Positions 11,835 through 60,927 of a stretch of DNA of 64,000 nt are shown here, piece by piece. The translations under genes were made by a program, and so were the position numbers. The DNA lies in the IMG/VR virus record IMGVR_UViG_3300032236_001850, positions 310,001 through 374,000 of that record. One strand, 5' to 3'. The stretch's first letter is position 1; each line of letters begins with the position of its first letter. The notes below the pieces were generated by a model, which saw nothing but the letters and a program-made list of their open reading frames with translations, was not told where the DNA came from and did not search any database.

Positions 11835-11842
11835 GATATATA
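11835..11842 (+). promoter_or_regulatory. GATATATA motif, putative late promoter
   Basis: One of 8 intergenic copies; 42 nt before the S1 gene start. Confidence 0.5.
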
Positions 11843-11884
11843 GTATAATTAATAGTAACGTATAATCATCTAAAACTAAAAAAA

Positions 11885-13045
11885 ATGAATTTTGATTCCT
11901 TAGAAAATTTTGAATGGGACTTACCTAATGGTTTATCTGTCAATTCTAAAATCAAATCCCCGGCAGGATCTAAAATATATTGCCACGAACCTTATGCTGA
12001 CGAACTAGCGAAACTTTATTTTGAAAGCAATGATAAATTCGAAGGAGGATCCAAGGATCTTTTGGACGGTGGAGTTTATCCTTGCACAATTATAAGTGTT
12101 AAAGCTGATGAGGCTTTAGCGCAAACTAACTCTGGTCAAACAATCTATATTGATTTGAAAAGAGAAAGAAGAGATGCAGAGAAACTTAATATTACCGGGA
12201 TTGGTTTTTATCCTGGTGAGGAGCTTAAAGCAAGAGTTCGAAAAATGAACGGAAGCTATTCCGGTTCTATCATAGAATATTACATACACAGTCTTAGAGC
12301 TGAGTTATTTGAACAAATCAAAAAAGAAAGTAATGCTTACCTTGTTAAGATTGTTAGTATCAACAAGGGTGGATATATTGCTGAATTGTCAGGTATCAAA
12401 TGTTTCATGCCTGGTTCATTAGCAGCAGCAAACAAAATAACTGATTTCGAATCGTACATTGGTAAAGAAATGCACGTAATGATTGAAGGTTACGTTGAAG
12501 CTAAGGATATATTCATAGTTTCTTATAAGAAATATCTTAATAGAATCATGGATTCCAAAATACAGGAACTTGATCTTACTAAGAAATACAAAGGGTATGT
12601 TACAGGAACAAGTGACTTTGGTGTGTTTGTTGAATGGGATGATGTTTATACAGGTCTTATACACAAAACAGAATTTGCTGAAGGAAACAGCTTAGCTTCA
12701 CTTTCTCCTGGTATAGAAATTGAATTCTATGTTAAAGAGATAAAAGACAACAACAGACTGACACTTACTCTAGATCAACCACTTGAAAGAAACGTAATCA
12801 TTCAAGATTTGGAATCTCAAGTTAATGATGGAACTGTTGAACCTATGGAAGCAAAGGTTAAACACAAAAGAAAAAATGGAGCTTTGGTAGAAATACAAGG
12901 ACTTGGTCTTCTAGCTCTAATACCTCAAGATAAATTGGGTAAGAAAGGAAACAGTATTAAAGTTGGAGACGACGTTACTGTTATTCCTTACGAGGTTGAA
13001 ACGATCTCGGGAAAAATATTCGTTAAAGTAGTAGATGTCGGATAA
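11885..13045 (+). CDS. rpsA: ribosomal protein S1-like protein (about 4 S1/OB domains)
   Basis: NKGGYIAELSGIKCFMPGSLA and GYVTGTSDFGVFVEWDDVYTGLIHKTE match bS1 domain 2 and domain 3 patterns. Confidence 0.8.
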   Translation: MNFDSLENFEWDLPNGLSVNSKIKSPAGSKIYCHEPYADELAKLYFESNDKFEGGSKDLLDGGVYPCTIISVKADEALAQTNSGQTIYIDLKRERRDAEKLNITGIGFYPGEELKARVRKMNGSYSGSIIEYYIHSLRAELFEQIKKESNAYLVKIVSINKGGYIAELSGIKCFMPGSLAAANKITDFESYIGKEMHVMIEGYVEAKDIFIVSYKKYLNRIMDSKIQELDLTKKYKGYVTGTSDFGVFVEWDDVYTGLIHKTEFAEGNSLASLSPGIEIEFYVKEIKDNNRLTLTLDQPLERNVIIQDLESQVNDGTVEPMEAKVKHKRKNGALVEIQGLGLLALIPQDKLGKKGNSIKVGDDVTVIPYEVETISGKIFVKVVDVG

Positions 13046-14441
13046 TAGAACACATTTTGATAAGCTCAATGCACTTAGCTCTTCCGTAATTGGATTTGAA
13101 TTTGAATTTTTTACTGACCTTTTAAAAGGTAGGGCTGCCGAAGCATTATCCAAACTTATCAAAAAGAAAGTTGTAGTTTCCGAAAAATATCACTCAAAAA
13201 CACCTGTAGATGCCAACAATTTTAAAATTGAACCTGATTATTCTGGTGGTAATAAAATGGTTGAGCTCATCACAGGACCTCTTCCTTACATGGAAGCAAT
13301 TCCAATTTTAATAAAAATATTAAAATGGATAGATGAAAATGGATGGACAAATGATAGATGTGCATTCCAATTTTCTGTAAGCTTCGATAAAAACAGACCG
13401 GAAGTAAAGAACAAAATTGAAACTATCGATAAACTTAAGTTTATATTAGGCCTTGATGAAGGCCTAATATATTCCAAGTTTGGAACTAGAGAAAAAAATG
13501 TTTATGCCAAGTCTGTTAAAAAAGTACTTCCTAGAAATAGATTTTCAATACTTGAAAACATCACCAGCATAGATCCTAAAATGTACCGAGTACCAGAGGA
13601 CAAATATTATGGTGTAAATTTTACAAAGATACCAAAGGGTTACATAGAATTTAGATATCTTGGTAACAGAGATTATCAAAAAAAGATAAAGGACATAAGG
13701 GAAATAATTGATTATATAGTTCTTTACCTTTATGATATTCTAAGCGGAAGAATCAGTGGGTACACTAAACAAGATCTTGCTACTCTCCAGGGTATGATGA
13801 ACAAATATGCTAAAGTTGTTAGATCTTTTAGCGATCCTGAAGTTTTCTTTAGAAATTATCCAGATTTTCACATATTCATAGATTTAAAGGGTTGGGATGA
13901 AAATGTTAAGACCTATTTTTTTGCAATAAGGGACAAAATATTTGATCTTATTGTGGATGGTAATATAACATCCTGTTATTTTAACTATGATACAACAACT
14001 GGTAGATTCCAAGTTAAGGAAGCTAGAAGTAGAGGTGCATTTGAAATAAGTGGGGTTGATCTTATATTATGTGATATAAAAAATGCAACAGTTAGAAATT
14101 GTAACATTTACAACTGCTCCATAAAAAAATCATGCATCGAGGATTCTTATATTTTTGGTGGAACTAAGGTTATATCATCTAAAATAAAAGCAACCATAAT
14201 TGATTTCGGTAACGAGCTCAAGGATTCCTTTGTCGATTGTGAAAATAAGAATATAAATTGTAAGATAATTGGTGGAGTATTTAGAGCGGGGATACTTGGT
14301 GATAATTCAGAACTAAGTAAAGAAACCATAAAAATTAAAGCTCCGGAGGATATTAGAATGACAAGATTTGTTACTGATAGTAGACTTAAAAATCTTAACG
14401 ACAAATATGGTGGTTCCAAGTTTGGAAACATGAACTACTAA
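13035..14441 (+). CDS. putative amidoligase (COOH-NH2 ligase, Amidoligase_2-like) with C-terminal beta-helix-like repeats
   Basis: IGFEFEF, EPDYSGG, VELITGP, TNDRCAFQ, KYYGVNF and YIEFRYLG motifs in family order; C-terminal I-x-x-C/S-x-I repeats. Confidence 0.65.
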   Translation: MSDNRTHFDKLNALSSSVIGFEFEFFTDLLKGRAAEALSKLIKKKVVVSEKYHSKTPVDANNFKIEPDYSGGNKMVELITGPLPYMEAIPILIKILKWIDENGWTNDRCAFQFSVSFDKNRPEVKNKIETIDKLKFILGLDEGLIYSKFGTREKNVYAKSVKKVLPRNRFSILENITSIDPKMYRVPEDKYYGVNFTKIPKGYIEFRYLGNRDYQKKIKDIREIIDYIVLYLYDILSGRISGYTKQDLATLQGMMNKYAKVVRSFSDPEVFFRNYPDFHIFIDLKGWDENVKTYFFAIRDKIFDLIVDGNITSCYFNYDTTTGRFQVKEARSRGAFEISGVDLILCDIKNATVRNCNIYNCSIKKSCIEDSYIFGGTKVISSKIKATIIDFGNELKDSFVDCENKNINCKIIGGVFRAGILGDNSELSKETIKIKAPEDIRMTRFVTDSRLKNLNDKYGGSKFGNMNY

Positions 14442-14455
14442 AATAAAAACTTAAC

Positions 14456-15250
14456 ATGACACAGGAAGAATTAGTACAAGAAATCGAGGATGCTCTAAAT
14501 TTTAGCTGCGCATTACCTTATAGCTTAAATGGAACTGAGGTTGAAAGAATCATAAAGAGAGCAAAGGCTTGGTTTTATGACAACTATCAATATGCAGTAG
14601 AGGATAGAGTTTTTGTTATAGCAAATAATATTTTCGCACATCCAGAATTCAGAAGAACCAGACAGATAGTACTTCCACCTTCAATAGTTGGTGTATATGA
14701 GGTTAGAGAACTGGGTGGTTATGGTGTATCAGGAACACCGGATAGAGATTTCGGTGATTCAAAATTGCTTGGTTCTGAATTACTTCTTTCTCCTTTTATG
14801 GGTGACAATATGGTTTATAGAACCGTTATGTACTCATATTTTGATTTATCAAAAGCATATCAACTAAACACCTTCGCTTACAAATACAATAAAAATACGA
14901 AAGCTCTAACCATACTTGGTAGAGATCCTAATAGATCTGGTATGGGTGCAAGCCAATCTGCACAATTAGCCCAAGGTTTTAACGGTTCTGGTGGTATGGA
15001 CGTTTCTGTTAGATGTCACGTAGCCATTCCTGATGAATACCTGTTTGATGATGAACTTTTTGTTAGATATTGTATAGCTAAATCTAAAATAGCACTTTCT
15101 CAGATGCTTGGTGTATTCACATACAATCTTCCTGGCGGTGTTACAATTAACGCCAGTGAAATAGGAACTCAAGGTACTACTGAACTTCAGGAGGTCATGG
15201 ATATGATCACTGGAGAAAATACTCCGTCCTATTTCTTACAATGGAATTAA
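14456..15250 (+). CDS. neck protein, T4 gp13-like
   Basis: C-terminal NLPGGVTINASEI signature; size and position fit. Confidence 0.75.
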   Translation: MTQEELVQEIEDALNFSCALPYSLNGTEVERIIKRAKAWFYDNYQYAVEDRVFVIANNIFAHPEFRRTRQIVLPPSIVGVYEVRELGGYGVSGTPDRDFGDSKLLGSELLLSPFMGDNMVYRTVMYSYFDLSKAYQLNTFAYKYNKNTKALTILGRDPNRSGMGASQSAQLAQGFNGSGGMDVSVRCHVAIPDEYLFDDELFVRYCIAKSKIALSQMLGVFTYNLPGGVTINASEIGTQGTTELQEVMDMITGENTPSYFLQWN

Positions 15251-15254
15251 TCTC

Positions 15255-15278
15255 GATATATAAGGGGAATTAATTCCC
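15255..15278 (+). promoter_or_regulatory. GATATATA motif followed by a 14-bp palindrome
   Basis: GATATATA at 15255-15262; GGGAATTAATTCCC at 15265-15278; ATG at 15280. Confidence 0.55.
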
Positions 15279-15279
15279 T

Positions 15280-15651
15280 ATGAGAGAAATTTATAATAGA
15301 GATCCCGACGATCCAAAGTACAATCCTTACCAATTAGAGGTAACAGATCCAATAGAAATCTGTACTGGTCAACTTAAAATGCTTCTCCTTACCAATAAAG
15401 GTGAGGTTCTTGGTGATCCTAAATTTGGTTTAAATTTAGAGGATCTTATTTTCAATCTGGAACTTTCTGAATATAGTATAAAAAAGGAACTTGATCTCAA
15501 TCTTAAGGTCTACGTTCCTCTTTTTTCTACGCTAGGTGGGACCTATGATTTAAAATTCTATCAGGGAACTCTAAGAGACATTGCAACCCTTGATTTTTAT
15601 ATACAAGCTGATGGTGGACTAAGTCCATTAGTAACCCTAAAATTAACATAA
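15280..15651 (+). CDS. baseplate wedge protein, T4 gp25-like
   Basis: LLLTNKGEVLGDPKFGLNL matches the gp25/gpW pattern L.T..GER...P.FG. Confidence 0.85.
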   Translation: MREIYNRDPDDPKYNPYQLEVTDPIEICTGQLKMLLLTNKGEVLGDPKFGLNLEDLIFNLELSEYSIKKELDLNLKVYVPLFSTLGGTYDLKFYQGTLRDIATLDFYIQADGGLSPLVTLKLT

Positions 15652-15655
15652 TAAA

Positions 15656-17380
15656 ATGAATATATTTAAGAAGAATAATATACTTATAGATGGATTACTT
15701 GGTGATACATTTACCTTTCTACAAAGTACATATAATCAAACAGCAAATGTCTTCACCGTTGCTTCCGCTTGGGGACAAATTCTTTTTGTTTTGCAGAATC
15801 TTTCTCAGCTTATACTTTATTTTATTGAGGATTCCATAACAGAGTTAAACATTCAGGAAGCAACGAGGGACTATTCAATAAGAAGCTTAGCAAGGATTGC
15901 AGGTTATGACCCAGGTAGAGCTTCTGCTGCGCAGGGAGAAATTAGTATGGCTTGGAATACCAGGGAAGGTGATGTTTCTGGTGGTGCAGTTATTATAAAA
16001 AATAATTCTCAAATAAGATGCCTACAAAATGGTAAAATATATTCACTCAGATTTGGAAGTAGTGAGGTTACAATTCCGTTGGTAAGAGGTAATAGTATAG
16101 CAGCAAAAATAGTTCAGGGTAATTTCGAAACAGCAACACTTACTGGTACTGGAGTAGGTTTACAAAGTTATAATCTTCCATCAGCTTCCGGAGCTTATAT
16201 AGATCAATTTTATATAGATGTTTATGTGAATGAGGAGAATTGGAAAAGATATGATTCTTTATATGATATACCGCTTAATGGGAAAGGTTATCTTGTTAGA
16301 AGTGGAATACAGGAGGGAATAGATCTTTACTTTGGAAATTCTAATTTTGGTATGGTTCCGCCACCTGGTTCAATGATTAGGGTTGAATATTTACAAACTA
16401 GTGGTGTAAGCGGCAATACAAATTCAACAAAAGAATATCCATTGACTTATAAATTCGTAACCAGTGGAACTGATTTGTTTGGTAGTGAGGTTGATCTCAA
16501 TCTTTACATAGACATGAAAAATGTTATTGATCCATCTTTTGGAACAAATCCTGAAGCAATCTCTCTAATAAGATTAGTAGCACCAAAAACAAGTAGATCT
16601 TTTGTTTTTGCAAATCCGGAAAATTATGAAATCTTCCTAAGTAAATTTGGTGTTTTTTCACAAATACAAGCATTTTCCACTTTTGATGATGATTATCTTG
16701 ACGACGATAACATAGTTTATCTTTACTTAGTTCCTGATATCACGTTAAATCTTACAACAAATGAGGACTATTTTAGTGTACCAGATGCTGACTTTTTACT
16801 TACTACCCAACAAAAAACAAAGATTATAAATCTTTTACAGGATTCTGGTTCAATGATAGCTACAACAGTTGTTAAAATCGTTGAACCTGTTATAACAAGA
16901 TATGTTGTTAATGTCGTAATATCCATATTTGAAGGTTATGATCCTGAGACTATAAAACAAACAATAAGAAAAAGATTCTCCGATTATATGCTAGGTAATA
17001 AAAGAAGAGATAAAATACCCAAATCCGATCTTATTGCGATAGTTGAGGGAATACTTGGTGTTGATTCAGTTTCTTTATTTTTCGTTGGTCAAAAGAATGA
17101 GGCTAATCAAATAGCAATTAAGGATCTTACGAATGTTAGTGATGCTCAATATAATGAGGTTATAGGAATGGATAACTTTGGTGACATATTAATAGGTAGA
17201 AATGAACTAGTAATACTCAGAGGTGGATGGTCAGATAGGAATGGTACATTCTTTACTGATTCAATTGTAGCTGGTAAACCAGGACCTCTTAATATAACTA
17301 TTGCATCAATCGTACCTAAAAATTTAAGAAGCGGTCTAACAGATGATCTAAAAACACAATTAGCAGCACAAAATAAATAA
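15656..17380 (+). CDS. baseplate wedge protein, T4 gp6-like (baseplate J-like)
   Basis: SIRSLARIAGYDPGRASAA; LYFGNSNFGMVPPPGSMIRVEYLQTSG; follows gp25-like gene. Confidence 0.85.
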   Translation: MNIFKKNNILIDGLLGDTFTFLQSTYNQTANVFTVASAWGQILFVLQNLSQLILYFIEDSITELNIQEATRDYSIRSLARIAGYDPGRASAAQGEISMAWNTREGDVSGGAVIIKNNSQIRCLQNGKIYSLRFGSSEVTIPLVRGNSIAAKIVQGNFETATLTGTGVGLQSYNLPSASGAYIDQFYIDVYVNEENWKRYDSLYDIPLNGKGYLVRSGIQEGIDLYFGNSNFGMVPPPGSMIRVEYLQTSGVSGNTNSTKEYPLTYKFVTSGTDLFGSEVDLNLYIDMKNVIDPSFGTNPEAISLIRLVAPKTSRSFVFANPENYEIFLSKFGVFSQIQAFSTFDDDYLDDDNIVYLYLVPDITLNLTTNEDYFSVPDADFLLTTQQKTKIINLLQDSGSMIATTVVKIVEPVITRYVVNVVISIFEGYDPETIKQTIRKRFSDYMLGNKRRDKIPKSDLIAIVEGILGVDSVSLFFVGQKNEANQIAIKDLTNVSDAQYNEVIGMDNFGDILIGRNELVILRGGWSDRNGTFFTDSIVAGKPGPLNITIASIVPKNLRSGLTDDLKTQLAAQNK

Positions 17381-24689: not shown

Positions 24690-24697
24690 GATATATA
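24690..24697 (+). promoter_or_regulatory. GATATATA motif, putative late promoter
   Basis: Intergenic, 20 nt before ATG 24718. Confidence 0.55.
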
Positions 24698-24717
24698 ATC
24701 TGAATATAAATCGACAG

Positions 24718-30713: not shown

Positions 30714-31487
30714 TTAATCTAAATTGTTATCCTCTTTGTATTTTTCGTAGTTATCTGTTAACTCAACTAGAATAGGATTTCTTACTATATCCTCCCTTGT
30801 AAAAGTGAATGAATCACATTGACCTACTCCGTTTGCTATTTTTTCTGAAAATGTAAGTAGGTCTTTTTTTCTTGCTTTTAAATCCCATTGTGTGATGTCC
30901 CCACAAATAACTATTCTAGAATTCTGACCCATTCTGGTTACAACAAGCATTATTTGTCTAAGGTCTGCATTTTGTGCCTCATCCAAGATTAATATGGTGT
31001 CATCGAAAGTTCTACTTCTCATAAAAGCTAGTGGCTGCATATCAATTGTTTTTGTATCAGTCATTAGTTTTATTTTTTCCTTTGCTTTTAGTATTTTTTC
31101 CATGTTAGAGATATAACCTTCCATGTAAGGTGCTATCTTTTCATCAACTGATCCTGGAAGAAATCCAAGATTTTCCCCTGATTCAACTGCTGGTCTAGCA
31201 AGGATGATTTTAGAATGTTCTCCCTTTCTTATAAGATCTAGAGCTGCATAACACGCCACGAATGTTTTCGCTGTTCCTGCCGGTCCAGTGCAGACTGTTA
31301 AGAAATTACTTTCGATTGTTCTAAAAAATTTTAATTGTGAATCTGTGAATTTGATGTGATTGAAATCTTCCTTCTGTAGAATTGGCCCTTTTGGTAAACT
31401 ATCAACTTTAGAAGTTTTTGTTGATTTTGTTTGTTTTTTCTCCGTCTTAATTGGAGCTGGCTCATTTTTTACTTTTTTTCTTGGCAT
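30714..31487 (-). CDS. phoH: PhoH-like ATPase
   Basis: GPAGTAKT Walker A variant, RPAVESGENLGFLPG, LAFMRSRTF, ILDEAQN, GDITQWD, DIVRNP. Confidence 0.95.
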   Translation of the reverse strand: MPRKKVKNEPAPIKTEKKQTKSTKTSKVDSLPKGPILQKEDFNHIKFTDSQLKFFRTIESNFLTVCTGPAGTAKTFVACYAALDLIRKGEHSKIILARPAVESGENLGFLPGSVDEKIAPYMEGYISNMEKILKAKEKIKLMTDTKTIDMQPLAFMRSRTFDDTILILDEAQNADLRQIMLVVTRMGQNSRIVICGDITQWDLKARKKDLLTFSEKIANGVGQCDSFTFTREDIVRNPILVELTDNYEKYKEDNNLD

Positions 31488-31560: not shown

Positions 31561-31568
31561 GATATATA
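31561..31568 (+). promoter_or_regulatory. GATATATA motif, putative late promoter
   Basis: In the divergent intergenic gap, 29 nt before ATG 31598. Confidence 0.55.
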
Positions 31569-31597
31569 TTTCACACAAAAAACAATTAAAAAGAAAA

Positions 31598-44006: not shown

Positions 44007-45548
44007 ATGCCGGTAACCAATATAAAATTTATAAATTATAGTGACGGTCAAAATCTAGCAATAGATAAAATAAACCACAATTTTGACGAAATTGTAGAAG
44101 CCCATGGTGGATCTGTTGGAGAAACTGGACCTAGTGGGGATAGAGGACCAATTGGAAGTAATGGTTTAATTGGACCGACTGGAAATGATGGTCCAAGGGG
44201 AACCAAATGGTTTGTGCAGGGAATTATGCCATCAACAACACCCGGAAATTCTGTGGTTTATGGAGATTATTGGGTTAATAATGGGGATAGTTTAATTTAT
44301 CAATTTGGTCCTACTGGATGGAATAGCACAGGATATAGTTTGTCGTCTTCCGGTAATATATTTAATGATGTTACCTCATATTTTACTAATGGAGGAACAG
44401 GAATTTCTGTTAAATTTGATCAGGTTTCACCCGAAAATTATACTTTTATAATTTCGGATAAATCTGCTCAGTCTGGAATAATTAACGAGAAGCTAGCAAA
44501 ATTCCTTATTTCCACAGATACCTCCGGAGATCCTTCGGCTCTTCTTGAATTCATGAAAAGTGATTTGATTTTAAGCAACGCTGGAGATTATGCATTACAT
44601 CCAACTTTCTCGTGGGCTACCAGTTTACCAACTGATAACTCGTTGAAGTTTGATGTTCCTGGTGGATCGTTATTAATAGGAGCATCCGGTGGATTTTCCT
44701 CGAATTCACAAAAAATTGATGTCTCTGCAGGTTCTGCTATAGATATAAATTACGGAGCAACTTCTGGATCTGGTATATCTGCAACTGGTGGAATCAATAT
44801 CATTTCATCAAATCCAACAAACGGTGTTTTTAATATACTAAGTGATAATTTAAGTATAACTGGTGGACATGCATCCTTTAAAAGTAGTGTAGAGTTAAAC
44901 GGAAGTCCAAGTGGTAATTCTCCATCAGTTGAACTCATCATTGGTGGGACATCAGGTTTAAGAACAAGAAGAACAGCAGATAATTTTAACACCATATCAA
45001 ACAGTGTATATAATGTTTCTCTTGAAACACAAGCTGATAAGGAATTCTACATAAACACAAAGGGTAAAATAAGAACTAAAAAACTTAAAACAGGTGTGAC
45101 TTATCAAAGTTATCAGAATTCAGCATTTAGTTCCGGTGGAACAAATTGGTATTTTATATCAAGACCTGGTGGTCCAGTTCAATCTACTGTTATTAAAAAT
45201 GGAAATACTGTTATAGTAACAATAAATGAACCTAACCCAATAGCAAATTTTGGTATTGGTTTGTATAGTGATCCGCTTTATTCTTTATGGGGTCCTGGAT
45301 CAATAGACAATGGACAAGCCATTGATATAAGTGTTTACTGTAGTCCAGATTTAAACCAAGGATCCAATACTCTTTTTAAATATATTGGTGTTGGTACAAC
45401 TGGTGGTGTGGTTCCCAAAGTAACTTTACCTACTCCAGCATCAGCTGTTGATTTTACTATTGTCAAGGGTGTAACTGGTAGTACCACAACAGTTTATTAT
45501 AAAGCTTATACTAGTGCTGGAGGATCTGGAGGATCTTTTACAGTTTGA
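44007..45548 (+). CDS. collagen-like tail fibre protein, paralogue 1
   Basis: KINHNFD, then 10 Gly-X-Y triplets (44109-44198), GTKW...GDYW. Confidence 0.7.
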   Translation: MPVTNIKFINYSDGQNLAIDKINHNFDEIVEAHGGSVGETGPSGDRGPIGSNGLIGPTGNDGPRGTKWFVQGIMPSTTPGNSVVYGDYWVNNGDSLIYQFGPTGWNSTGYSLSSSGNIFNDVTSYFTNGGTGISVKFDQVSPENYTFIISDKSAQSGIINEKLAKFLISTDTSGDPSALLEFMKSDLILSNAGDYALHPTFSWATSLPTDNSLKFDVPGGSLLIGASGGFSSNSQKIDVSAGSAIDINYGATSGSGISATGGINIISSNPTNGVFNILSDNLSITGGHASFKSSVELNGSPSGNSPSVELIIGGTSGLRTRRTADNFNTISNSVYNVSLETQADKEFYINTKGKIRTKKLKTGVTYQSYQNSAFSSGGTNWYFISRPGGPVQSTVIKNGNTVIVTINEPNPIANFGIGLYSDPLYSLWGPGSIDNGQAIDISVYCSPDLNQGSNTLFKYIGVGTTGGVVPKVTLPTPASAVDFTIVKGVTGSTTTVYYKAYTSAGGSGGSFTV

Positions 45549-45554
45549 TATATA
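45547..45554 (+). promoter_or_regulatory. GATATATA motif, putative late promoter
   Basis: Overlaps the TGA stop; 24 nt before ATG 45579. Confidence 0.5.
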
Positions 45555-45578
45555 GTCTAAGATAATTAAACTGTATAG

Positions 45579-50200: not shown

Positions 50201-51133
50201 GAGGGTTTTAGCGGTTATGTTGACTTTGGTTCTAATGGTGTTTATTCTACCGCACCTGCATCATCAAATGGTGGACAGAATGTAAGTGTTACCTGGGAAT
50301 TTAGTAGACAACAAACTGGATCGTGTAACATTTATAAAAATGGAACATCAATTTCAAATCTTCTTATAAATAAAACAACTTCAGGAAATGGTTCTTTACC
50401 ATACTCCATAGGAGATAAAATATATTCTAACGTTTCCGCTGGTGGTGCTAGCTCCGGTTATATCGGTGCCTATGCATCATTAAGAATAACGAAAACTTCA
50501 TTAAGTACTGGTATAACAACAACTGAATTCACACAAAGCATTACTGCAGATGTTGGTACTGTTAATAATTTCTCCAATCCTGTTACGTTAGTTGCTGGAT
50601 ATTCTTATTATATAGAATGTGTTGCACAATCTACACCAACAGGTGGAGGTTGTTGTTTTGTTGGTGATACTCTTGTAACCATGTATAATGGAAGTTTAAA
50701 AAATATTTCTAGTGTAATAGCTGGTGATCTTATATTAACATATAATGTTGAAACGGATCAATATGGAAAAGGTACTGTAACGTCAATAGAGTCACCTATA
50801 AAGGACGATATTATAGAATTCATACTATCCAATGGAAATTCAATAAAAGCCACAACTGAGCATCCATTTTGGGTTATAGGAAAGGGTTGGAGCTCTTATA
50901 GTCCTGACAGAACGATGTTTGATCATCAAATGGAAGTTTCTAAATTGTCCATTGGTGATGTACTATTGGACGAAAGTGGAAATGAAATTGAATTATTATT
51001 TATGAATAATGATGCTCAAGATCTTCAAAGAGTTTATAATATTCTTATGGAAGATGGAGATCACACTTATTATGCAAATGGGATATTGGTTCATAACAAG
51101 CTTCAGTATAACGATGGAAATGGTTTAGTATAG
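47279..51133 (+). CDS. collagen-like tail fibre protein, paralogue 3, with delta-60-like beta-propeller repeats and a C-terminal Hint domain
   Basis: KINYNFD, then 10 Gly-X-Y triplets (47378-47467); repeats such as VKVNSDGTMDTTF, IIVGGSFNSFN, VYVGGRFTSY; Hint blocks at the C-terminus. Confidence 0.75.
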   Translation: MHFNTKYIFKGDTEKEIIGKINYNFDQILSFAIGPDGHPGPRGATGIFGPAGKRGPSGSPGIRASKWYKQPTEPSDAPNTNDVWIDNSVSDGNIKIFNYPITNYQWQNSGYSFLNSKYFQSYSYIQGPGGATDKYVIGFKYPGGITGSANTSLLISDFNLNSVKSNPNNSKVVVSTQDQIDRPIMTFSKNGAISDDVPSFYWNSTGNNAGLKFDIGGAFSVTTNNDFSIDSGLARTLITSNLSTFRNNQGAFNVHGDGDFLFASNIGLGVGGFLSITTKNLQVDNSSVNHYGGVTITSPLTSTYILNSKPSSPSYLNGISANIKTSAVIRTFEFEDYTGNAIMYGKPSGSVSSGNLAQTVFGTSGGFTGGTGGPFSYHVRKVKEVRQSTTGLSARQYLTTTTNNLTDVLDMSTNTIWENDIILATPTAYSSVSSSNLGSFKVGDIDSSFNYSSGLDIFGSGFKNSLTGTGVYDAVVNDVFRLTDGSGSTIFAGNFKYYNDQPVKTGSLTNVLGLVKVNSDGTMDTTFRANISAISLVSVTSINGAVVDESGGPYGSGLIYIYGCFTHTTNKNGILCLNLDGTLYSTFNSNMGIGINSGSSIFKAGIDPTGTNLFAVGDFTYYKTTTTFRNKLMKIKINGASDGLLNTSFLSGSTSVGPGFVGSSNIPYCFDFLPSGNIIVGGSFNSFNSSTSGSPFTINSVIELNSSNGLRVTTGGFANIIYSTFIASDPIVSSIKYNSYNSYIYIGGSFSKINGTDYGRIARFTITGTTFTLDSTLSSTTGFNDIVYDFAFDGSKVYVGGRFTSYRGTLCPAFVKINNNGSIDPTASIYHNIVSPKSIQPTFEWTVGLVKKMYLSIVDNEFMYVGGFLNSVFSASASNNGIYIKVPSSITQDYLPVYTDGTTTNYRVFLNDPGNDAKLHYIKGLVFDAGLPNAVTSYVDFSQGATGCQYVDLMWVSKTSTANIANPRLFYKNCEGFSGYVDFGSNGVYSTAPASSNGGQNVSVTWEFSRQQTGSCNIYKNGTSISNLLINKTTSGNGSLPYSIGDKIYSNVSAGGASSGYIGAYASLRITKTSLSTGITTTEFTQSITADVGTVNNFSNPVTLVAGYSYYIECVAQSTPTGGGCCFVGDTLVTMYNGSLKNISSVIAGDLILTYNVETDQYGKGTVTSIESPIKDDIIEFILSNGNSIKATTEHPFWVIGKGWSSYSPDRTMFDHQMEVSKLSIGDVLLDESGNEIELLFMNNDAQDLQRVYNILMEDGDHTYYANGILVHNKLQYNDGNGLV
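50654..51097 (+). other. Hint (intein-like/BIL) autoprocessing domain, 148 aa, no endonuclease
   Basis: Block A CFVGDTLV, block B ATTEHPFW, blocks F/G RVYNI...HTYYANGILVHN; the +1 residue is Lys. Confidence 0.9.
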
Positions 51134-51161
51134 AAACTAAATATCATCAAATAAAAAATGT

Positions 51162-51169
51162 GATATATA
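51162..51169 (+). promoter_or_regulatory. GATATATA motif, putative late promoter
   Basis: Intergenic, 15 nt before ATG 51185. Confidence 0.55.
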
Positions 51170-51184
51170 ATAAAATTATAAAGT

Positions 51185-51430
51185 ATGAAAGATTTAACAG
51201 ATCAAGAAAAAGAAAGATTGCTTAGATTATCTAAAAAGTTTATTAAGGTCCACCAGGACATTTTTAAAATAGAGGAATCTATTAAAATTATGCAAGAGAG
51301 ATCATGTAAACTGATTGGAGATCTTGAGAAATGTAGAGATGCAGAAAAAGATTTCATAAAGGATCTATCTCAAAAATATGGTAATGGAACTTTAGATCCA
51401 CTTACGCTAACCTGGAAAAAAGAAATATAG
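51185..51430 (+). CDS. small coiled-coil protein
   Basis: 81 aa, heptad pattern, ends KYGNGTLDPLTLTW. Confidence 0.7.
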   Translation: MKDLTDQEKERLLRLSKKFIKVHQDIFKIEESIKIMQERSCKLIGDLEKCRDAEKDFIKDLSQKYGNGTLDPLTLTWKKEI

Positions 51431-54796: not shown

Positions 54797-55345
54797 ATGT
54801 TATTAAACCCAAAAGGTAATAGTTTTTATTTTGTATTTCCTAAAGGATTTTTCCCTCCTAAAGTTGTTGATAAATATTTGCCTTATATCAAAAAACAACC
54901 TGTGCCCTTTGATAATATTAGTGATTACATGAATAGCACAATTCAGACTATAGGGTTTCCTAATATGACGATAGATTCAGTGGAACAGATTAGAAATCTC
55001 GGTAAGAAAATATCATACAAGAGTTCAACGAACGTTCAAGATTTATTCTCCCACGATTTTAGTATTGGATTTAAGAATGTCGATGGGTTTATAAACTATT
55101 TCATCATGCTCGATACCATATTACATTTTTTAAATTTTGAAAATCCGGAGTTGAGATTACCAAATTTGCCATTAAGAATAATGGACAATGAAGGAAATAT
55201 AGTAACATCCGTAACGTTCAAAGAGGTAATATTAACATCATATTCGGAATTGCAATTGAGTTATTCAGCTAATGCAAATCAATTCACACCATTTACTTTA
55301 GGTTTCAAATGTAACTACCTTGATATAGTTCTAGAAGCAAAGTAG
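54797..55345 (+). CDS. tail-tube-fold protein, T4 gp3-like tail completion protein
   Basis: 182 aa; IQTIGFPNMTI...FINYFIM...LRIMDNEGN..VTFKEV...L.Y...FTLGF fits the gp3/gp19 fold; lies near uvsY/uvsW as in other T4-like phages. Confidence 0.55.
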   Translation: MLLNPKGNSFYFVFPKGFFPPKVVDKYLPYIKKQPVPFDNISDYMNSTIQTIGFPNMTIDSVEQIRNLGKKISYKSSTNVQDLFSHDFSIGFKNVDGFINYFIMLDTILHFLNFENPELRLPNLPLRIMDNEGNIVTSVTFKEVILTSYSELQLSYSANANQFTPFTLGFKCNYLDIVLEAK

Positions 55346-55352
55346 ATATATA
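55345..55352 (+). promoter_or_regulatory. GATATATA motif, putative late promoter
   Basis: Overlaps the TAG stop; 19 nt before ATG 55372. Confidence 0.5.
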
Positions 55353-55371
55353 CTTAAACAAACAATTTAAA

Positions 55372-55608
55372 ATGAAAACATTCTCAAATTTAAAAGAACT
55401 AAACGAAGCAAAATATGGCCAGCCGTTATATAGCGAAAAGGACCATATGAAGAATCTTCTTATTGCTGCTTGTGGTAATGATAGAAGAGTTCTTGATGAC
55501 ATCGTAGATTGCCTTACTGATGAGCAAGTTAAGTCTTGTTTTACTAAGTTATCTAAAGTGTATGGAACAACAAATTCGGTTGGACAAAAACAGGATATTA
55601 ATCAGTAA
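55372..55608 (+). CDS. small protein with capsid-targeting-like N-terminus (possible internal head protein)
   Basis: MKTFSNLKELNEA; preceded by GATATATA. Confidence 0.55.
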   Translation: MKTFSNLKELNEAKYGQPLYSEKDHMKNLLIAACGNDRRVLDDIVDCLTDEQVKSCFTKLSKVYGTTNSVGQKQDINQ

Positions 55609-55620
55609 TACATAAATTAT

Positions 55621-56334
55621 ATGAATTTAGTCGGAATCGACTTCTCACTGAATTCTCCAGCTTTTTGTTGTTTTAAGAACAATAGATATATATGGGGATC
55701 AGTTTCAAGATCAGACAGAACGTCTGAATCTTTATTAAAAAACAAGAAAAAACCATATTTTATACTTGATTCTAACGATAGCTTTATTGTAAAGATATTA
55801 GAGAAACAGGAATTTACTACAGAGTATTCTGCTAGGGAAAGAGAAAAAATGGGATATTTCTTAGAAATTGTTGAAGTTCTTTGGAATTCTATACTTGAGA
55901 TCATGGGCGATGAGCCATTCCATGTAGCAATGGAGGGTTTAAGTTTTTCGTCCAATGGTAACTCACTTGTAGACATCTCGATGGCAACAGCTCTACTGAG
56001 AGAAAGAATAATAGATAGAATTGGAAGTGAAAATTTTTATGTTTTCTCACCAACAACTCTTAAAAAATTCGCAGTTAAGGGCAACGCAAAAAAGGATGAA
56101 TTGTATCACGCATTATATAATTTAAGAGAGGATGAAACAAACTTGAATGTGTTCTGTAAGATATTAGAAGAGAATAAAAACGAATGGATAACTAAGGCTA
56201 AGGCAATAAACAAGCCAATAGATGATGTTGTCGATTCAACTTGGGTAAACTTGTATTTAAAAGAGGAATTAAGAGGGAATAATGAAATTATTAAAGGAAA
56301 AAAGAATAACAAAACTACAAAGAAATTGGGATAA
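55621..56334 (+). CDS. RuvC-like (RNase H fold) nuclease / Holliday junction resolvase
   Basis: LVGIDFSLNSPA, VAMEGLSF, PTTLKKFA..GNAKKDEL, DDVVDS: acidic catalytic residues in RuvC order. Confidence 0.75.
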   Translation: MNLVGIDFSLNSPAFCCFKNNRYIWGSVSRSDRTSESLLKNKKKPYFILDSNDSFIVKILEKQEFTTEYSAREREKMGYFLEIVEVLWNSILEIMGDEPFHVAMEGLSFSSNGNSLVDISMATALLRERIIDRIGSENFYVFSPTTLKKFAVKGNAKKDELYHALYNLREDETNLNVFCKILEENKNEWITKAKAINKPIDDVVDSTWVNLYLKEELRGNNEIIKGKKNNKTTKKLG

Positions 56335-56405
56335 AATTCTATTGACTCTTTCTGAGCAATCCCCAATAATCGAACAAGCAATCAATATTTTATCATATAC
56401 AATTT

Positions 56406-56436
56406 GACACTAGGTACAACTATCTGGTGTCTTTTT
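56406..56436 (+). terminator. intrinsic terminator-like hairpin
   Basis: 11-bp stem GACACTAGGTA / TATCTGGTGTC (two G-U pairs), loop CAAC, followed by TTTTT. Confidence 0.65.
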
Positions 56437-56491
56437 GCTGTTTGGTATTCACCATAAAAAATAAAAAAAATGTAATATTATAAGATTAGAG

Positions 56492-56572
56492 GAAACAAAA
56501 AGAAAAACAAAAGTAAAATTTAAAGAATTTAAAACAAATTAAAAAACAAAATTAAAAAAAAATTAAGAAAAG
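56492..56572 (+). promoter_or_regulatory. A-rich unstructured leader with ATTAA/TTAAA repeats (putative gp32 autogenous translational operator)
   Basis: AATTTAAAG AATTTAAAAC AAATTAAAAAAC AAAATTAAAAAAA AATTAAGAAAAG then ATG. Confidence 0.5.
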
Positions 56573-57550
56573 ATGAGTAATTTAGACATTTTCAATTTAG
56601 ATGCAGAGGCATTCGTAACAAAAGTTCCAACATCAGGAGGAGACAAAGATGATTTTTATAAACCATACCCAGAAGATGGTAAAGATGGAGTTTATAAATC
56701 ATTAATCAGATTCTTACCAAATCCAGAGAATCCAGCAAAATCAAAAATCCACAAATATTATGTTTATTTGAAAGATCCAGTAAGTGGTGATGGATTTTCT
56801 GCAGACTGTCCTTCAACCGTTGGTAAAAAATCAGTATTAAAGGATTTATTCTGGAAGCTTAAGAATTCACATTCTGCCGCTGACCAGGAGTTATCTAAAA
56901 ACTTCGCAAGAAAAGAGGATTTTTATTCTCTAGTTCAAATCGTACAAGATAAAAATAGACCAGAATTGGAAGGCAAAATTATGATCTTTAAATTCGGTAA
57001 AAAACTTAACGATATGATCGAAGCTCAATTGCAACCAGAATATGGTGCACCTTGTAATCCTTTCGATCTTTTCGAAGGTAGAGAATTTTCTGTAAGTGTA
57101 AGAAAAGTTGGTGAATGGAACAACTACGATCTTTGTTCTTTCGTTGGTGAAAAAACAGCAATCAAAGTTAATGGTAAATCAATGGAGAAAAACCAAAAAG
57201 ATATGGAAGTTATCCTTGCTTACTTAAACGAGGGTCCTAAAAATCTTACTAGCTTTGATTATAAAGACTGGGATGACGATCTTACAGAGAAAGTTATGAA
57301 TGTTATTAGAAATAGCGTTCCTGAGCAAAGAGTTCTTAATGAGATCTTAGGTGGAGCTGCTTCAGCACCTTCTAGACCAGCACCTCAAGCTGCTCCTAGA
57401 TCATCTGCTCCACAAACAAGTAATTCTGCTAATGATCTTTATGATGAGGTTAGCAACACAAAGGTAAGTGGATATGAAAACACTGCACCTTCAGCTCCTA
57501 GCACAGCTAGTGCAACAAATTCATTAGAGGATCTTTATAACGACCTATAA
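56573..57550 (+). CDS. single-stranded DNA-binding protein, T4 gp32-like
   Basis: IRFLP, DCPSTVGK, GKIMIFKFGKK, NPFDLFEGREF, NYD; Ala/Pro linker and acidic tail LEDLYNDL. Confidence 0.9.
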   Translation: MSNLDIFNLDAEAFVTKVPTSGGDKDDFYKPYPEDGKDGVYKSLIRFLPNPENPAKSKIHKYYVYLKDPVSGDGFSADCPSTVGKKSVLKDLFWKLKNSHSAADQELSKNFARKEDFYSLVQIVQDKNRPELEGKIMIFKFGKKLNDMIEAQLQPEYGAPCNPFDLFEGREFSVSVRKVGEWNNYDLCSFVGEKTAIKVNGKSMEKNQKDMEVILAYLNEGPKNLTSFDYKDWDDDLTEKVMNVIRNSVPEQRVLNEILGGAASAPSRPAPQAAPRSSAPQTSNSANDLYDEVSNTKVSGYENTAPSAPSTASATNSLEDLYNDL

Positions 57551-57562
57551 TATTTTATAAAT

Positions 57563-57600
57563 AAAGGGACATCTCCTTAGACGAGTTGTCCCTTTTTATT
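57563..57600 (+). terminator. intrinsic terminator after the SSB gene
   Basis: Stem AAAGGGACA (57563-57571) / TGTCCCTTT (57587-57595), inner CTC/GAG pairing, T-rich tail. Confidence 0.75.
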
Positions 57601-57608
57601 TTATAGAG

Positions 57609-58911: not shown

Positions 58912-58912
58912 T

Positions 58913-59356
58913 ATGTCTGAACAAAAAGCAGATTTCGGAAAGATTTTCGAAAACGAGAGAGAAGAGTGGAAAGAAAAAATACAGGTGCTCTCGTTAAATA
59001 TGAAGGACATCAAAACCTTAGCAAAAGCTCAGGTTGATATGTTCAGTTATAGACAGGTGCTATTGGAATATAGCTATAAATTAGCCGGTATAGTTTCCAA
59101 ATTAAACTCCAAATATAAATCTGACAAGGCACGAAAAATGAGAGAATATTCGGAACAGATGAATGTTAGATATGGAGCAACTGAAAAAATGTTGCTTATC
59201 GAGGGAGATCTGGTTGAGATATCAGAAAAAATGGAACTTGTTGAGAATCATAGAAAATTCATCGATCAGACGATACAGACTGTTGATCACATGTTATATG
59301 GGGTTAGACAAAGAATAGCTTTGGAGGACTATTTAAGAGGCTCCACTGTAAAATAA
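58913..59356 (+). CDS. uvsY: recombination mediator, UvsY-like
   Basis: 147-aa helical protein immediately upstream of uvsW; LLIEGD...FIDQTIQTV..M.Y.VR..I pattern. Confidence 0.6.
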   Translation: MSEQKADFGKIFENEREEWKEKIQVLSLNMKDIKTLAKAQVDMFSYRQVLLEYSYKLAGIVSKLNSKYKSDKARKMREYSEQMNVRYGATEKMLLIEGDLVEISEKMELVENHRKFIDQTIQTVDHMLYGVRQRIALEDYLRGSTVK

Positions 59357-59366
59357 GAATTATAGC

Positions 59367-60908
59367 ATGTTAAAATTTAGAGTAACTGACGATCATCAAT
59401 GGATGCTCCTATTGGAAGCATTGGACGAGGTTGAGAAAAAACAGGTTGAGATATCTTTAACACAAAAGATACATAATCATTTTTTTCACCCTTTGGTGAA
59501 GAAAAAGATATGGGACGGATCAATATGTTTCATAGAAAAGAAGGGTGGATTTTGGAAGGTTCCAATAGGACTCTGGAGAGAACTTTTAGATATTGGAGAA
59601 AAATATAAAATCCAAATCAATATCGAGGGTCTGAATAATGTAATAACCAATGATATAAAACTTGAAGATTTTACTCAATGGGTTATGGAATTCTTTGAAG
59701 GAGGGATTGGTGGAAATCCAGAAAAGATGCCAAGAGATTATCAAATAGAGACAGCATGGAAAATTCTTAGATATAGATATTCAGTTTCTGAGGTTGCTAC
59801 ATCATCAGGAAAAACACTTATTTCATTTATGATATTTGCTTATCTCAAATCTAAAGGTCTTGCTAGAAAGATACTTATGATCGTGCCAAATTCCAATCTG
59901 GTTTTTCAGGGTAATGACGATTTTGAGGAATATGGTCTTGATAAATTGGATGGCGTTAAAATACAGCAAATTGGAGGCGGAAGTAAAATGAAGGATGGCT
60001 GTGATATTATAATAGGAACATACCAATCCCTAGTTAAGAGAGAATCTGATTTTTTCGAGGAGGTTGATTGTGTTTTTATAGATGAGGCACATCATACCAA
60101 TAGTACATCAATAAAGAAGATAGTTTCTCAATGTATGCATTCCAAATGGAGATTTGGCCTTACTGGAACTCTAACAAAAAAAGGGACTGCCGACTATCTA
60201 ACAATCCAACAATTTCTTGGACCTTTAGTTATGGAAATACCTCCAAGTTTTCTTTTTGATAATGGATATGCAACTCCAGTTTCCATAAAGGTTGTCACTA
60301 TGGATTGGCTTGATCCCGTTTATAAGGAAAAGCTAGCAGATTTAAAACTCAGCGACAATAATGTCGAGGGTAACGAAATTTATAATCTTGAAAGAAAATT
60401 AGTTATTGAAAGCAAGGTTAGGCTAAATTATGTTACAGATTTTATAAATAAAACCTCTAAAAATTCTCTTGTTCTTTTCCAATCAGTTAAGGAAGAATAC
60501 GGTAAGCAAATATGGAATCTTCTTAGAGAATTAAATGGCGATAGAGAGGTGTTTTATGTCGATGGCGACACGAGTGAGGCTTTGAGAGAGGAATATAAGA
60601 GAAGAATGTCAATTGGCTCTAATAAGGTCTTAATTGCGACATACGGAACTTTCTCAACAGGTATATCCATAAATAACTTACATAATATATTTCTTGTTGA
60701 GTCCTATAAAAGTGAAATTTTAATTAAACAAAGTTTAGGTAGGGGAATGCGTAAGATGGAGGGCAAGGAAAAAGTTAATGTTATAGATTTCGTTGATGAT
60801 TTTAGCACAAGAAAATATAAGAGCTATTTAGCTAAGCATAGTCTGGAAAGAATAGAAATCTACAAGAAGGAAGGTTTTGAATATAAGATTTACAATGTTA
60901 AACTTTAA
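59367..60908 (+). CDS. uvsW: SF2 DNA helicase, UvsW-like
   Basis: PRDYQ, ATSSGKT, DEAHH, FGLTGT, TFSTGISI, QSLGRGMR, IDFVDD. Confidence 0.9.
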   Translation: MLKFRVTDDHQWMLLLEALDEVEKKQVEISLTQKIHNHFFHPLVKKKIWDGSICFIEKKGGFWKVPIGLWRELLDIGEKYKIQINIEGLNNVITNDIKLEDFTQWVMEFFEGGIGGNPEKMPRDYQIETAWKILRYRYSVSEVATSSGKTLISFMIFAYLKSKGLARKILMIVPNSNLVFQGNDDFEEYGLDKLDGVKIQQIGGGSKMKDGCDIIIGTYQSLVKRESDFFEEVDCVFIDEAHHTNSTSIKKIVSQCMHSKWRFGLTGTLTKKGTADYLTIQQFLGPLVMEIPPSFLFDNGYATPVSIKVVTMDWLDPVYKEKLADLKLSDNNVEGNEIYNLERKLVIESKVRLNYVTDFINKTSKNSLVLFQSVKEEYGKQIWNLLRELNGDREVFYVDGDTSEALREEYKRRMSIGSNKVLIATYGTFSTGISINNLHNIFLVESYKSEILIKQSLGRGMRKMEGKEKVNVIDFVDDFSTRKYKSYLAKHSLERIEIYKKEGFEYKIYNVKL

Positions 60909-60919
60909 TTTTTATTAGG

Positions 60920-60927
60920 GATATATA
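60920..60927 (+). promoter_or_regulatory. GATATATA motif, putative late promoter
   Basis: Intergenic, 18 nt before ATG 60946. Confidence 0.55.

What the first reader, a model, noticed from the sequence alone, without database searches (positions are those of the whole stretch)
11835..60927. Recurring intergenic GATATATA octamer: putative non-T4 late promoter
Seen: exact GATATATA at 11835, 15255, 24690, 31561, 45547, 51162, 55345 and 60920, each on the plus strand 15-42 nt before a start codon, with no shared -35 element. I noticed only two copies inside ORFs (1409, 55685), although coding DNA is over 95% of the window. Copies sit where structural transcription must restart, after the GT and after the inverted phoH. 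Knowledge: T4 late promoters are a lone TATAAATA read by the gp55 sigma factor. Inference: a phage sigma factor with altered specificity.
Basis: partly seen in the sequence, partly recalled or inferred. Interest (0 to 1): 0.6.

Follow-up and report, generated by a model that had tools for sequence, protein, structure and literature searches.

The report
Variant T4-type late promoter box
GATATATA is very probably the late-gene promoter of a 434-kb uncultured pond phage of Bacteroidota-type hosts, a two-base variant of phage T4's TATAAATA box read by a stripped-down gp55-like sigma factor, and about a fifth of its copies should produce mRNAs that start right at the ATG.

Summary
The window belongs to a 434,509-bp phage genome related to Lak and other huge Bacteroidota phages.

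- **Placement.** All 10 window copies are on the + strand, and 8 lie in the ~1.7% non-coding DNA (P~4e-13). Genome-wide, 72 of 92 copies lie within 60 nt upstream of a same-strand start. It is the most upstream-enriched 8-mer and is 2.5-3-fold depleted inside genes on both strands.
- **Anatomy.** Nothing is conserved at -35. An A sits 5 nt after the box in 62 of 72 copies. Spacing to the ATG is bimodal: exactly 4 nt in 14 genes (implying leaderless mRNA) or 13-29 nt.
- **Genes.** The box heads the sheath, portal, prohead protease plus capsid, head-closure, neck, baseplate and fibre genes. Replication and metabolic genes sit behind a separate host-type TTG-N19-TAnnTTTG class.
- **Machinery.** No phage RNA polymerase was found. 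There are three sigma genes, one a 119-aa gp55 homolog lacking T4's helix-loop-helix (HLH) motif and sliding-clamp-binding tail.
- **Relatives.** The box, its geometry and its position before orthologous genes recur in related phages. All 32 ATATATA-type loci fall in a minimal-gp55 clade.

No RNA data exist, so start sites and the sigma assignment are inferred. Verdict: a new variant of a known kind.

The parts
11835..11842 (+). GATATATA box; predicted start A at 11847; heads 11885-13045 (S1-domain protein) through the neck-protein homolog 14456-15250
15255..15262 (+). GATATATA box; position 13 is G at 15267; heads 15280-15651, the baseplate wedge gene 15656-17380 and the 1595-aa gene. The 17-nt leader is an inverted repeat AGGGGAATTAATTCCCT
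24690..24697 (+). GATATATA box; position 13 is G at 24702; heads 24718-26598 and the 1364-aa gene 26619-30713
31561..31568 (+). GATATATA box; predicted start A at 31573; restarts + strand transcription after the inverted phoH; heads 31598-32503 and the large genes up to 45548
45547..45554 (+). GATATATA box overlapping the TGA stop of 44007-45548; predicted start A at 45559; heads the collagen-like fibre gene 45579-47270 and 47279-51133
51162..51169 (+). GATATATA box; predicted start A at 51174; heads 51185-51430 and the following genes up to 55345
55345..55352 (+). GATATATA box whose G is the last base of the upstream TAG stop; predicted start A at 55357; heads 55372-55608
60920..60927 (+). 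GATATATA box just after the DnaB-like helicase gene; predicted start A at 60932; heads 60946-61494 and downstream genes
1409..1416 (+). GATATATA copy inside ORF 1032-1688 (sense strand), position 13 is G, no start codon nearby; probably a chance or non-functional copy
55685..55692 (+). GATATATA copy inside ORF 55621-56334, position 13 is G; function not shown
30714..31487 (-). Inverted phoH-like gene that interrupts the + strand late units; neither box type within 60 nt upstream of it

Best explanation
GATATATA is the -10-like box of this phage's late promoters. Host RNA polymerase core, carrying the phage's minimal gp55-family sigma (119 aa, genome 281665-282024, made from its own promoter behind a terminator), recognises the box without any -35 contact. 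It melts the A/T-rich stretch downstream and starts at the purine, usually A, 5 nt after the box. That yields either a 9-25-nt leader or, when the ATG sits exactly 4 nt after the box, a leaderless mRNA. Early genes use a separate host-type class (TTG-N19-TAnnTTTGC, leader GTAATTAAA). These include the RpoD-like sigma directly, and the ECF-like sigma via the dCMP-deaminase gene that precedes it in its unit. Shown here: the box, its enrichment, its geometry, the gene classes behind it, the presence of a gp55 homolog and conservation in relatives. Inferred: that the box is a promoter, the start point, the late timing, and which sigma reads it.
For: Placement: 72 of 92 copies lie <=60 nt upstream of a same-strand start, and it is the top upstream-enriched 8-mer at 13.9-fold. 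Avoidance: inside genes it is depleted on both strands against synonymous-codon shuffles, sense 14 vs 34.1 +/- 4.8 and antisense 6 vs 18.5 +/- 4.2. Anatomy: no -35 conservation, A at position 13 in 62/72 copies (47/57 among leadered ones), and an A-rich stretch at positions 13-20. Spacing: bimodal, with 14 cases at exactly 4 nt. The same result appears without any gene calls and in 29 independent viral loci, where 35 cases fall at 4-5 nt and position 13 is A in 126/161. Function: the box heads tail sheath, portal, prohead protease plus MCP, head closure, neck, baseplate hub and wedge, and fibres. TAnnTTTG heads ligase, ATP-dependent protease, dCMP deaminase (with the ECF-like sigma next in its unit) and the RpoD-like sigma, and DNA polymerase pieces fall in such units. 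Machinery: no RNAP beta subunit or T7-type RNAP found, three sigma-family genes, and the gp55 homolog confirmed. Resemblance to T4: 6 of 8 identical to TATAAATA, no -35, A/T-rich downstream, both polarities (PMC2988020). gp55 pocket residues N13, F86, Y97 and T99 are conserved (PMC7892883). Conservation: LR756500.1 has the same top 8-mer with A13 in 28/29. The box is kept before 6 of 8 orthologous genes against 9 of 76 controls, P=3e-4. LR756502 uses AATATATA. All 32 ATATATA-type loci lie in the minimal-gp55 clade.
Against: There is no transcript evidence: only DNA runs hold the sequence. Two other phage sigmas exist whose targets are unknown. No specificity-determining residue in gp55 tracks the ATATATA/ATAAATA switch. 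Lak-A1 and MA9V-2 sit in the same minimal-gp55 clade yet use T4-like ATAAATA. The implied start, the 5th nt after the box, is one nt closer than at T4 P23, so the register relative to T4 is uncertain. gp33 and a sliding clamp, which T4 needs for activated late transcription, were not detected. The gene calls come from a crude ATG-ORF caller.
Confidence: 0.75

Rival explanations
1. The box is a promoter but is read by another sigma, either the phage's 300-aa RpoD-like sigma or its 222-aa ECF-like sigma, for example as an extended -10-type element (TGnTATATA) that needs no -35.
For: Both sigmas exist, the RpoD-like one directly behind an early host-type box and the ECF-like one in an early-box-headed unit. 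G at box position 1 could act as the G of a TG extension, and in LR756500.1 the base before the G is T in 20 of 29 copies.
Against: In this genome the base before the G is not conserved (T in 19 of 72). ECF sigmas normally need a -35. The box is 6/8 identical to the gp55 box of T4, and box type tracks the gp55 clade. The implied 4-nt discriminator is short for sigma-70-type promoters.
Confidence: 0.12
2. The box is a real phage promoter but not late-specific; it is used at middle times or throughout infection.
For: It also heads many small accessory genes, a RimK-like gene, an endonuclease and a gene just after the helicase. There are no timing data.
Against: Every virion hallmark gene identified lies in a box-headed unit, and replication hallmarks with their own signal carry the other class. 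gp55 homologs are late factors wherever they have been studied (PMC2988020).
Confidence: 0.08
3. The octamer is an RNA-level signal, such as an endonuclease processing site or a translation signal, rather than a promoter.
For: It lies in the 5' region of mRNAs in sense orientation, and a defined 5' end 5 nt downstream could also arise by cleavage. The T4 review gives the same caution about primer-extension ends.
Against: Depletion inside genes is equally strong on the antisense strand. Minus-strand singleton genes each carry their own copy with no upstream co-directional transcript to process. The variable 13-29-nt spacing excludes a ribosome-binding role.
Confidence: 0.04

Closest known systems
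Phage T4 late promoters (TATAAATA at -13..-6) read by gp55 with gp33 and the gp45 clamp
   Same: An 8-bp A/T box about one helical turn before the start, no -35 element, an A/T-rich melted segment downstream, both polarities, placement before virion genes, 6 of 8 positions identical, and a gp55-family sigma with conserved base-flipping pocket residues N13, F86, Y97 and T99.
   Different: Position 1 is T->G and position 5 is A->T. The inferred start is at the 5th rather than the 6th nt after the box. This gp55 is 119 aa and lacks the HLH motif and the clamp-binding motif that T4 needs for full activity. No gp33 or gp45 was detected. A leaderless class exists.
In-silico late-promoter consensuses of other T4-related phages (KVP40, 44RR and S-PM2 highly similar to T4; Aeh1 with a/gC at -13/-12)
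   Same: Shows that the consensus drifts at the upstream end of the box within the T4 superfamily (PMC2988020). The G/A at position 1 here is that kind of change.
   Different: Those variants keep the central AAA. This clade changes the central base to ATATATA, and does so across dozens of uncultured loci.
Group 2.2 jumbo phages (Lak, PTm1-like) described as lacking an RNAP and encoding minimal and RpoD-like sigmas (PMC7824862)
   Same: Same gene repertoire: no RNAP, a minimal sigma plus RpoD-like sigma(s), gp23-type capsid and T4-like morphogenesis genes.
   Different: That survey gives no promoter consensus. Lak-A1 and MA9V-2 appear to use T4-like [AT]ATAAATA, unlike this phage. The gp33 and DsbA orthologs reported for the group were not found here.
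Bacteroidota primary-sigma promoters (-33 TTTG / -7 TAnnTTTG)
   Same: This is the phage's other, early promoter class: TTG-N19-TAtaTTTGc, 77 genes (consensus as used in PMC7641319 and PMC2483708, listed).
   Different: GATATATA has no TTTG and no upstream element, so it is not of this class.

Membership tests
T4-type (gp55) late promoter | Single 8-bp A/T-rich box with no conserved -35 element | tested here: met
   No upstream position exceeds 0.2 bits in 72 copies.
T4-type (gp55) late promoter | Consensus TATAAATA | tested here: not met
   The consensus is GATATATA (A tolerated at position 1), 6/8 identical. GATAAATA is upstream of genes in only 3 of 23 copies.
T4-type (gp55) late promoter | A/T-rich segment immediately downstream of the box | tested here: met
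   Positions 13-20 are 57-86% A, and A+T is 79-93%.
T4-type (gp55) late promoter | Box about one helical turn upstream of a mapped transcription start | not testable with these tools
   No RNA runs exist. The start at box position 13 is inferred from the conserved A and the exact 4-nt leaderless spacing.
T4-type (gp55) late promoter | Precedes late (virion and assembly) genes, in either polarity | tested here: met
   Sheath, portal, protease plus MCP, head closure, neck, baseplate and fibres; 27 copies on the minus strand before minus genes.
gp55 late sigma family | Sequence homology to the gp55 sigma-region-2-like domain | tested here: met
   phrog_234 at E=2e-15, PDB 7D7C chain F at E=2.5e-4, reciprocal phmmer at 8e-6, cyanophage gp55 at 1e-8.
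gp55 late sigma family | Base-flipping pocket residues and RNAP clamp-helix contacts | tested here: met
   N13, F86, Y97 and T99 are conserved and H95 is F, as in cyanophages. Acidic E70 (as D) and E77 are kept, D74 is not (PMC7892883).
gp55 late sigma family | HLH motif (extended H4 plus H5) and C-terminal sliding-clamp-binding motif | tested here: not met
   The protein ends at 119 aa, aligned to about T4 residue 125. The clade shares only a short tail, DNx[IS][YH]S[IFLV].
T4 late activation complex | gp33 co-activator present | tested here: inconclusive
   No hit with T4 gp33 in a six-frame phmmer search, and no hit for five weak candidates against PHROGs. The protein is small and fast-evolving.
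T4 late activation complex | gp45-type sliding clamp present | tested here: inconclusive
   PF09116, PF02916 and PF02768 found nothing. Divergent clamps could be missed.
Sigma-70 extended -10 promoter (TGnTATAAT) | Conserved TG one base upstream of the -10 hexamer | tested here: inconclusive
   G is invariant. The preceding T is present in only 19 of 72 copies here but 20 of 29 in LR756500.1.
Bacteroidota -33/-7 promoter | TAnnTTTG at -7 with TTTG about 19 nt upstream | tested here: not met
   Absent at GATATATA copies; present at the separate early class.

The most novel reading that the evidence does not exclude
A large, mostly uncultured clade of big Bacteroidota-type phages runs late transcription with a minimal gp55 (about 92-127 aa) that has neither the HLH motif nor the clamp-binding tail, that is, without the T4 sliding-clamp activation mechanism. 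This sigma reads an ATATATA-type box and starts so close to it that a dedicated set of late mRNAs is leaderless. Many of those mRNAs encode proteins with a T4-internal-protein-like N-terminal capsid-targeting peptide (MKxIKTFxxFE), making them cargo packed into the head for delivery into the next host.
Probability: 0.3. Interest if true: 0.65.

Novelty: new variant of a known kind. Interest (0 to 1): 0.5.

Why it matters
It gives huge phages of Bacteroidota-type hosts, including relatives of the Lak megaphages, a usable map of transcription units. There are two promoter classes that can be read straight from sequence, which lets early and late genes be told apart in genomes where most proteins have no known function. 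It shows how far the T4 late system can be pared down and re-tuned: a sigma of about 120 aa and a changed central base in the box. It also predicts a set of leaderless late mRNAs, which suits hosts that largely lack Shine-Dalgarno-led initiation. The box and its sigma would be compact parts for gene-expression tools in Bacteroidota. The co-occurring N-terminal peptide points to candidate packaged or ejected proteins.

Tried and rejected
1. **H95F co-variation.** T4 gp55 H95 lines the -9 base pocket and is F here. I rejected this as the cause of the changed base because cyanophage gp55 also has F95 and uses ATAAATA.
2. **Specificity-determining residues across 64 gp55 sequences.** Only T4 F60->Y and V117->K separate the two groups, and both are confounded by phylogeny.
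3. **GTAATTAA as a third promoter class.** It is the conserved leader start 3 nt after the early TATATTTGC box.
4. **gp33, DsbA and gp45 searches.** Nothing was found.
5. **Expression evidence.** No RNA run holds the sequence.
6. **Strain-level conservation from pond metagenome contigs.** Nine indels are listed at 51110-51149, just upstream of the 51162 box, and none from 51150 through the box and start codon. The substitution table was truncated, so this is only suggestive.
7. **Near-identity search against GenBank phages.** No match.
8. **Terminator-then-promoter layout.** Only 9 of 73 copies have a terminator-like hairpin within 90 nt upstream.
The label for 9937-11802 has no support from Pfam or PHROGs.
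10. **Careful maximum-likelihood tree.** It did not finish, so a quick tree was used.
Full report
**Context.** The window is bases 310001-374000 of a single 434,509-bp virus contig (GC 35%, direct terminal repeats). It has no near-identical GenBank phage. Its baseplate wedge protein finds only huge or jumbo phages at 29-37% identity: an uncultured 462-kb phage (LR756500.1), the Prevotella Lak megaphages, uncultured phages of 635-735 kb, and Tenacibaculum, Chryseobacterium, Flavobacterium and Sphingomonas jumbo phages. Near-identical DNA occurs only in pond and aquatic DNA metagenomes.

**Observation.** The count alone is unremarkable, at 10 against 6.7 +/- 2.9 in shuffles. However, eight copies sit in the ~1.7% of the window that is non-coding (P~4e-13), 15-42 nt before an ATG. 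Two of them overlap the stop codon of the gene in front (45547 TGA, 55345 TAG).

The genome has 92 copies. Seventy-two lie <=60 nt upstream of a same-strand start, and the 27 minus-strand copies mostly precede minus-strand genes. GATATATA is the single most upstream-enriched 8-mer, at 13.9-fold. Inside genes it is depleted on both strands relative to synonymous-codon shuffles: sense 14 vs 34.1 +/- 4.8, antisense 6 vs 18.5 +/- 4.2. That is what a DNA-level, orientation-dependent signal predicts. An RNA-level signal would be avoided only on the sense strand.

**Anatomy.**
- Nothing is conserved upstream of the box from -44 to 0, so there is no -35 element.
- Within the box only position 1 tolerates change. 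AATATATA is upstream of genes in 17 of 43 copies, while most other single mismatches fall at background levels (<=13% of copies upstream).
- Position 13, the fifth nt after the box, is A in 62 of 72 copies, and positions 13-20 are A-rich.
- Spacing from box end to ATG is bimodal. It is exactly 4 nt in 14 genes, which puts the A of the ATG on position 13, and 13-29 nt in nearly all others, of which 47 of 57 still have A at position 13. An ORF-caller-independent count gives the same picture.

The simplest reading is that transcription starts at position 13, giving short leaders or fully leaderless mRNAs. Only 9 of 73 copies have a terminator-like hairpin within 90 nt upstream, so most are internal re-initiation points.

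**Gene classes.** Box-headed units contain:
- the tail sheath (box at genome 265858);
- the portal (282524);
- the head maturation protease followed by the major capsid protein homolog (296778);
- a head-closure protein (260683);
- in the window, the neck, baseplate hub, baseplate wedge and collagen-like fibre genes.

A second, architecturally different class has the layout TTG-N19-TAtaTTTGc plus a GTAATTAAA leader. It matches the Bacteroidota -33/-7 layout and heads 77 genes concentrated at 40-70 and 130-200 kb. These include DNA ligase, an ATP-dependent protease, dCMP deaminase and the phage's RpoD-like sigma, with the ECF-like sigma next in the deaminase unit. DNA polymerase pieces fall in such units, and the helicase has only a weak in-gene match. 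From 240 to 400 kb almost all signals are GATATATA. This supports an early/late split and a Bacteroidota-type host.

**Machinery.** No multisubunit RNAP beta subunit was found. The T7-type RNAP search also found nothing, but its control genomes gave no match either, so it is uninformative. Three sigma-family genes exist:
- a 300-aa RpoD-like one behind an early box;
- a 222-aa ECF-like one in an early operon;
- a 119-aa protein at genome 281665-282024, next to a gp4-like head-completion gene.

The 119-aa protein matches PHROG 'late sigma transcription factor' at 2e-15. Its only PDB hit is T4 gp55 (7D7C chain F, residues 10-113). It is the reciprocal best hit of T4 gp55, and it finds annotated gp55 genes of T4-like cyanophages. 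Its gene follows an intrinsic terminator and carries neither box type, so it is not simply self-driven.

**Comparison with T4.** T4 late promoters are an 8-bp TATAAATA at -13 to -6 with no -35 conservation, an A/T-rich melted segment downstream, about 50 sites, and either polarity (PMC2988020). gp55 flips non-template A-12, A-9 and A-8 into pockets lined by Y97, N13/H95 and T99. It has an HLH motif important for open-complex formation and a C-terminal clamp-binding motif (PMC7892883).

GATATATA matches TATAAATA at 6 of 8 positions and differs at positions 1 and 5. In the protein, N13, F86, Y97 and T99 are conserved and two of the three acidic RNAP contacts are kept. The chain ends at about T4 residue 125, so the HLH motif and the clamp-binding motif are absent. 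Relatives share only a short tail, DNx[IS][YH]S[IFLV]. gp33 and a sliding clamp were not detected, which is inconclusive. The idea that H95F explains the A-to-T change at -9 fails, because cyanophage gp55 also has F95. No other residue cleanly tracks box type.

**Relatives.**
- In LR756500.1 (GC 24%, gp55 49.5% identical by tblastn) GATATATA is again the top upstream 8-mer, with A at position 13 in 28 of 29 copies.
- Among 84 reciprocal-best orthologs (median 34% identity), 6 of 8 genes with the box here also have it there, against 9 of 76 without. This gives P=3e-4 and includes sheath, head closure and protease.
- In a 40-kb stretch of LR756502, AATATATA is upstream of genes in 23 of 31 copies, with the same 4-6-nt class.
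- Lak-A1 (40 kb examined) and Chryseobacterium phage MA9V-2 late genes instead carry the T4-like [AT]ATAAATA.
- Among 57 gp55-bearing viral contigs of at least 8 kb, 29 are ATATATA-type. In those, 161 of 210 copies precede an ORF within 60 nt, with a spike at 4-5 nt (35 cases) and A at position 13 in 78%.
- On a quick, midpoint-rooted gp55 tree, all 32 ATATATA-type rows lie in one clade of short gp55s (92-127 aa), separated at 98% support from the T4/cyanophage clade. That clade has longer gp55s (137-233 aa) and only ATAAATA-type or unclassified loci. The tree is quick, and locus classification rests on few sites each.

**Side finding.** Twenty-one proteins begin with M-[KR]-x-[IL]-K-x-F-x-x-[FL]-F-E. 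All lie in box-headed units, 13 directly behind a box (9 of them in the exact 4-nt leaderless class) and none behind an early box. The rest of each protein is mostly unrelated. The same peptide recurs in the leaderless genes of LR756502 and other loci. T4 internal proteins start MKTFKEF (ipI) and MKTYQEFIAE (ipII, ipIII). From my own knowledge, this is the capsid-targeting sequence removed by the gp21 prohead protease after an L/I-x-E motif. A gp21-like protease is present here. This is a lead, not a test.

**Limits.** There are no RNA data, so the start sites, the late timing and the sigma-to-box assignment are inferences. Gene calls are from a simple longest-ATG-ORF procedure. The strain comparison from metagenome contigs was truncated and is only suggestive.

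**Verdict.** This is a real, strongly non-random regulatory element, best explained as a T4-type late promoter with a shifted consensus, read by a minimal gp55-like sigma on host RNAP. The kind is known. The consensus, the clade-wide switch to ATATATA, the pared-down sigma and the leaderless class are new variations on it.

Noticed in passing
Genome coordinates (outside the window), gene starts 93963-, 127965-, 130684-, 131922+, 164636-165208-, 170609-, 194724+, 197313+, 200218+, 212663+ and others; loci L053, L055, L057-L059: Twenty-one otherwise mostly unrelated proteins share the N-terminal peptide M[KR]x[IL]KxFxx[FL]FE. All are in GATATATA-headed units, and 9 have the ATG exactly 4 nt after the box. 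The peptide resembles the N-termini of T4 internal proteins ipI, ipII and ipIII, suggesting a capsid-targeting and protease-cleavage signal.
   Followed up: partly
Genome 40-70 kb and 130-200 kb; dense tandem array at about 180-193 kb (L058): Second promoter class with the full Bacteroidota-type layout TTG-N19-TAtaTTTGc followed by a conserved leader start GTAATTAAA, about 11-13 nt before the ATG. It has two upstream flavours, ATTTTTTTAT and ATCGTTG. It heads 77 genes, apparently the early set.
   Followed up: partly
Genome 204386-205288(-), 274045-274713(+), 281665-282024(+): Three sigma-family genes in one phage (RpoD-like, ECF-like, gp55-like). The targets of the first two are unknown, and no third promoter motif was found. 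The gp55 gene follows a clear intrinsic terminator and has an unclassified promoter region.
   Followed up: partly
window 15263-15279: The 17-nt leader after the 15255 box is a near-perfect inverted repeat (AGGGGAATTAATTCCCT) ending at the ATG. It would put a hairpin at the very 5' end of that mRNA.
   Followed up: no
window 11885-13045: The first gene behind the 11835 box carries an S1 RNA-binding domain (Pfam 2.8e-12) in the middle of a virion-gene region.
   Followed up: no
window 57550-57608 and 56335-56572: A strong intrinsic terminator (AAAGGGACA...TGTCCCTTTTTATTTT) sits just before the primase gene. A 238-nt A-rich gap without either box precedes the gp32-like SSB gene. The replication genes at the right end of the window therefore use other signals.
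   Followed up: no
L074 (Lak-A1, 40 kb) and MA9V-2 (L038-L048): Lak-A1 and Chryseobacterium phage MA9V-2 carry T4-like [AT]ATAAATA before genes, including the MA9V-2 capsid gene. MA9V-2 also has a repeated early-looking element, TTTTCATATGTCG...TTAAATTTATACTATAAT.
   Followed up: partly
window 51110-51149: Related strains in pond metagenomes (three studies) show nine listed indels in the spacer just upstream of the 51162 box, and none listed from 51150 through the box and start codon. The table was truncated.
   Followed up: partly
Genome 233884-235980(+) and 396321-397796(+): A 698-aa ATP-dependent protease (phrog_4871, E=3e-244) sits behind an early box, and a RimK-like 'ribosomal protein S6 glutaminyl transferase' homolog sits behind a GATATATA box.
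   Followed up: no
   Followed up: yes
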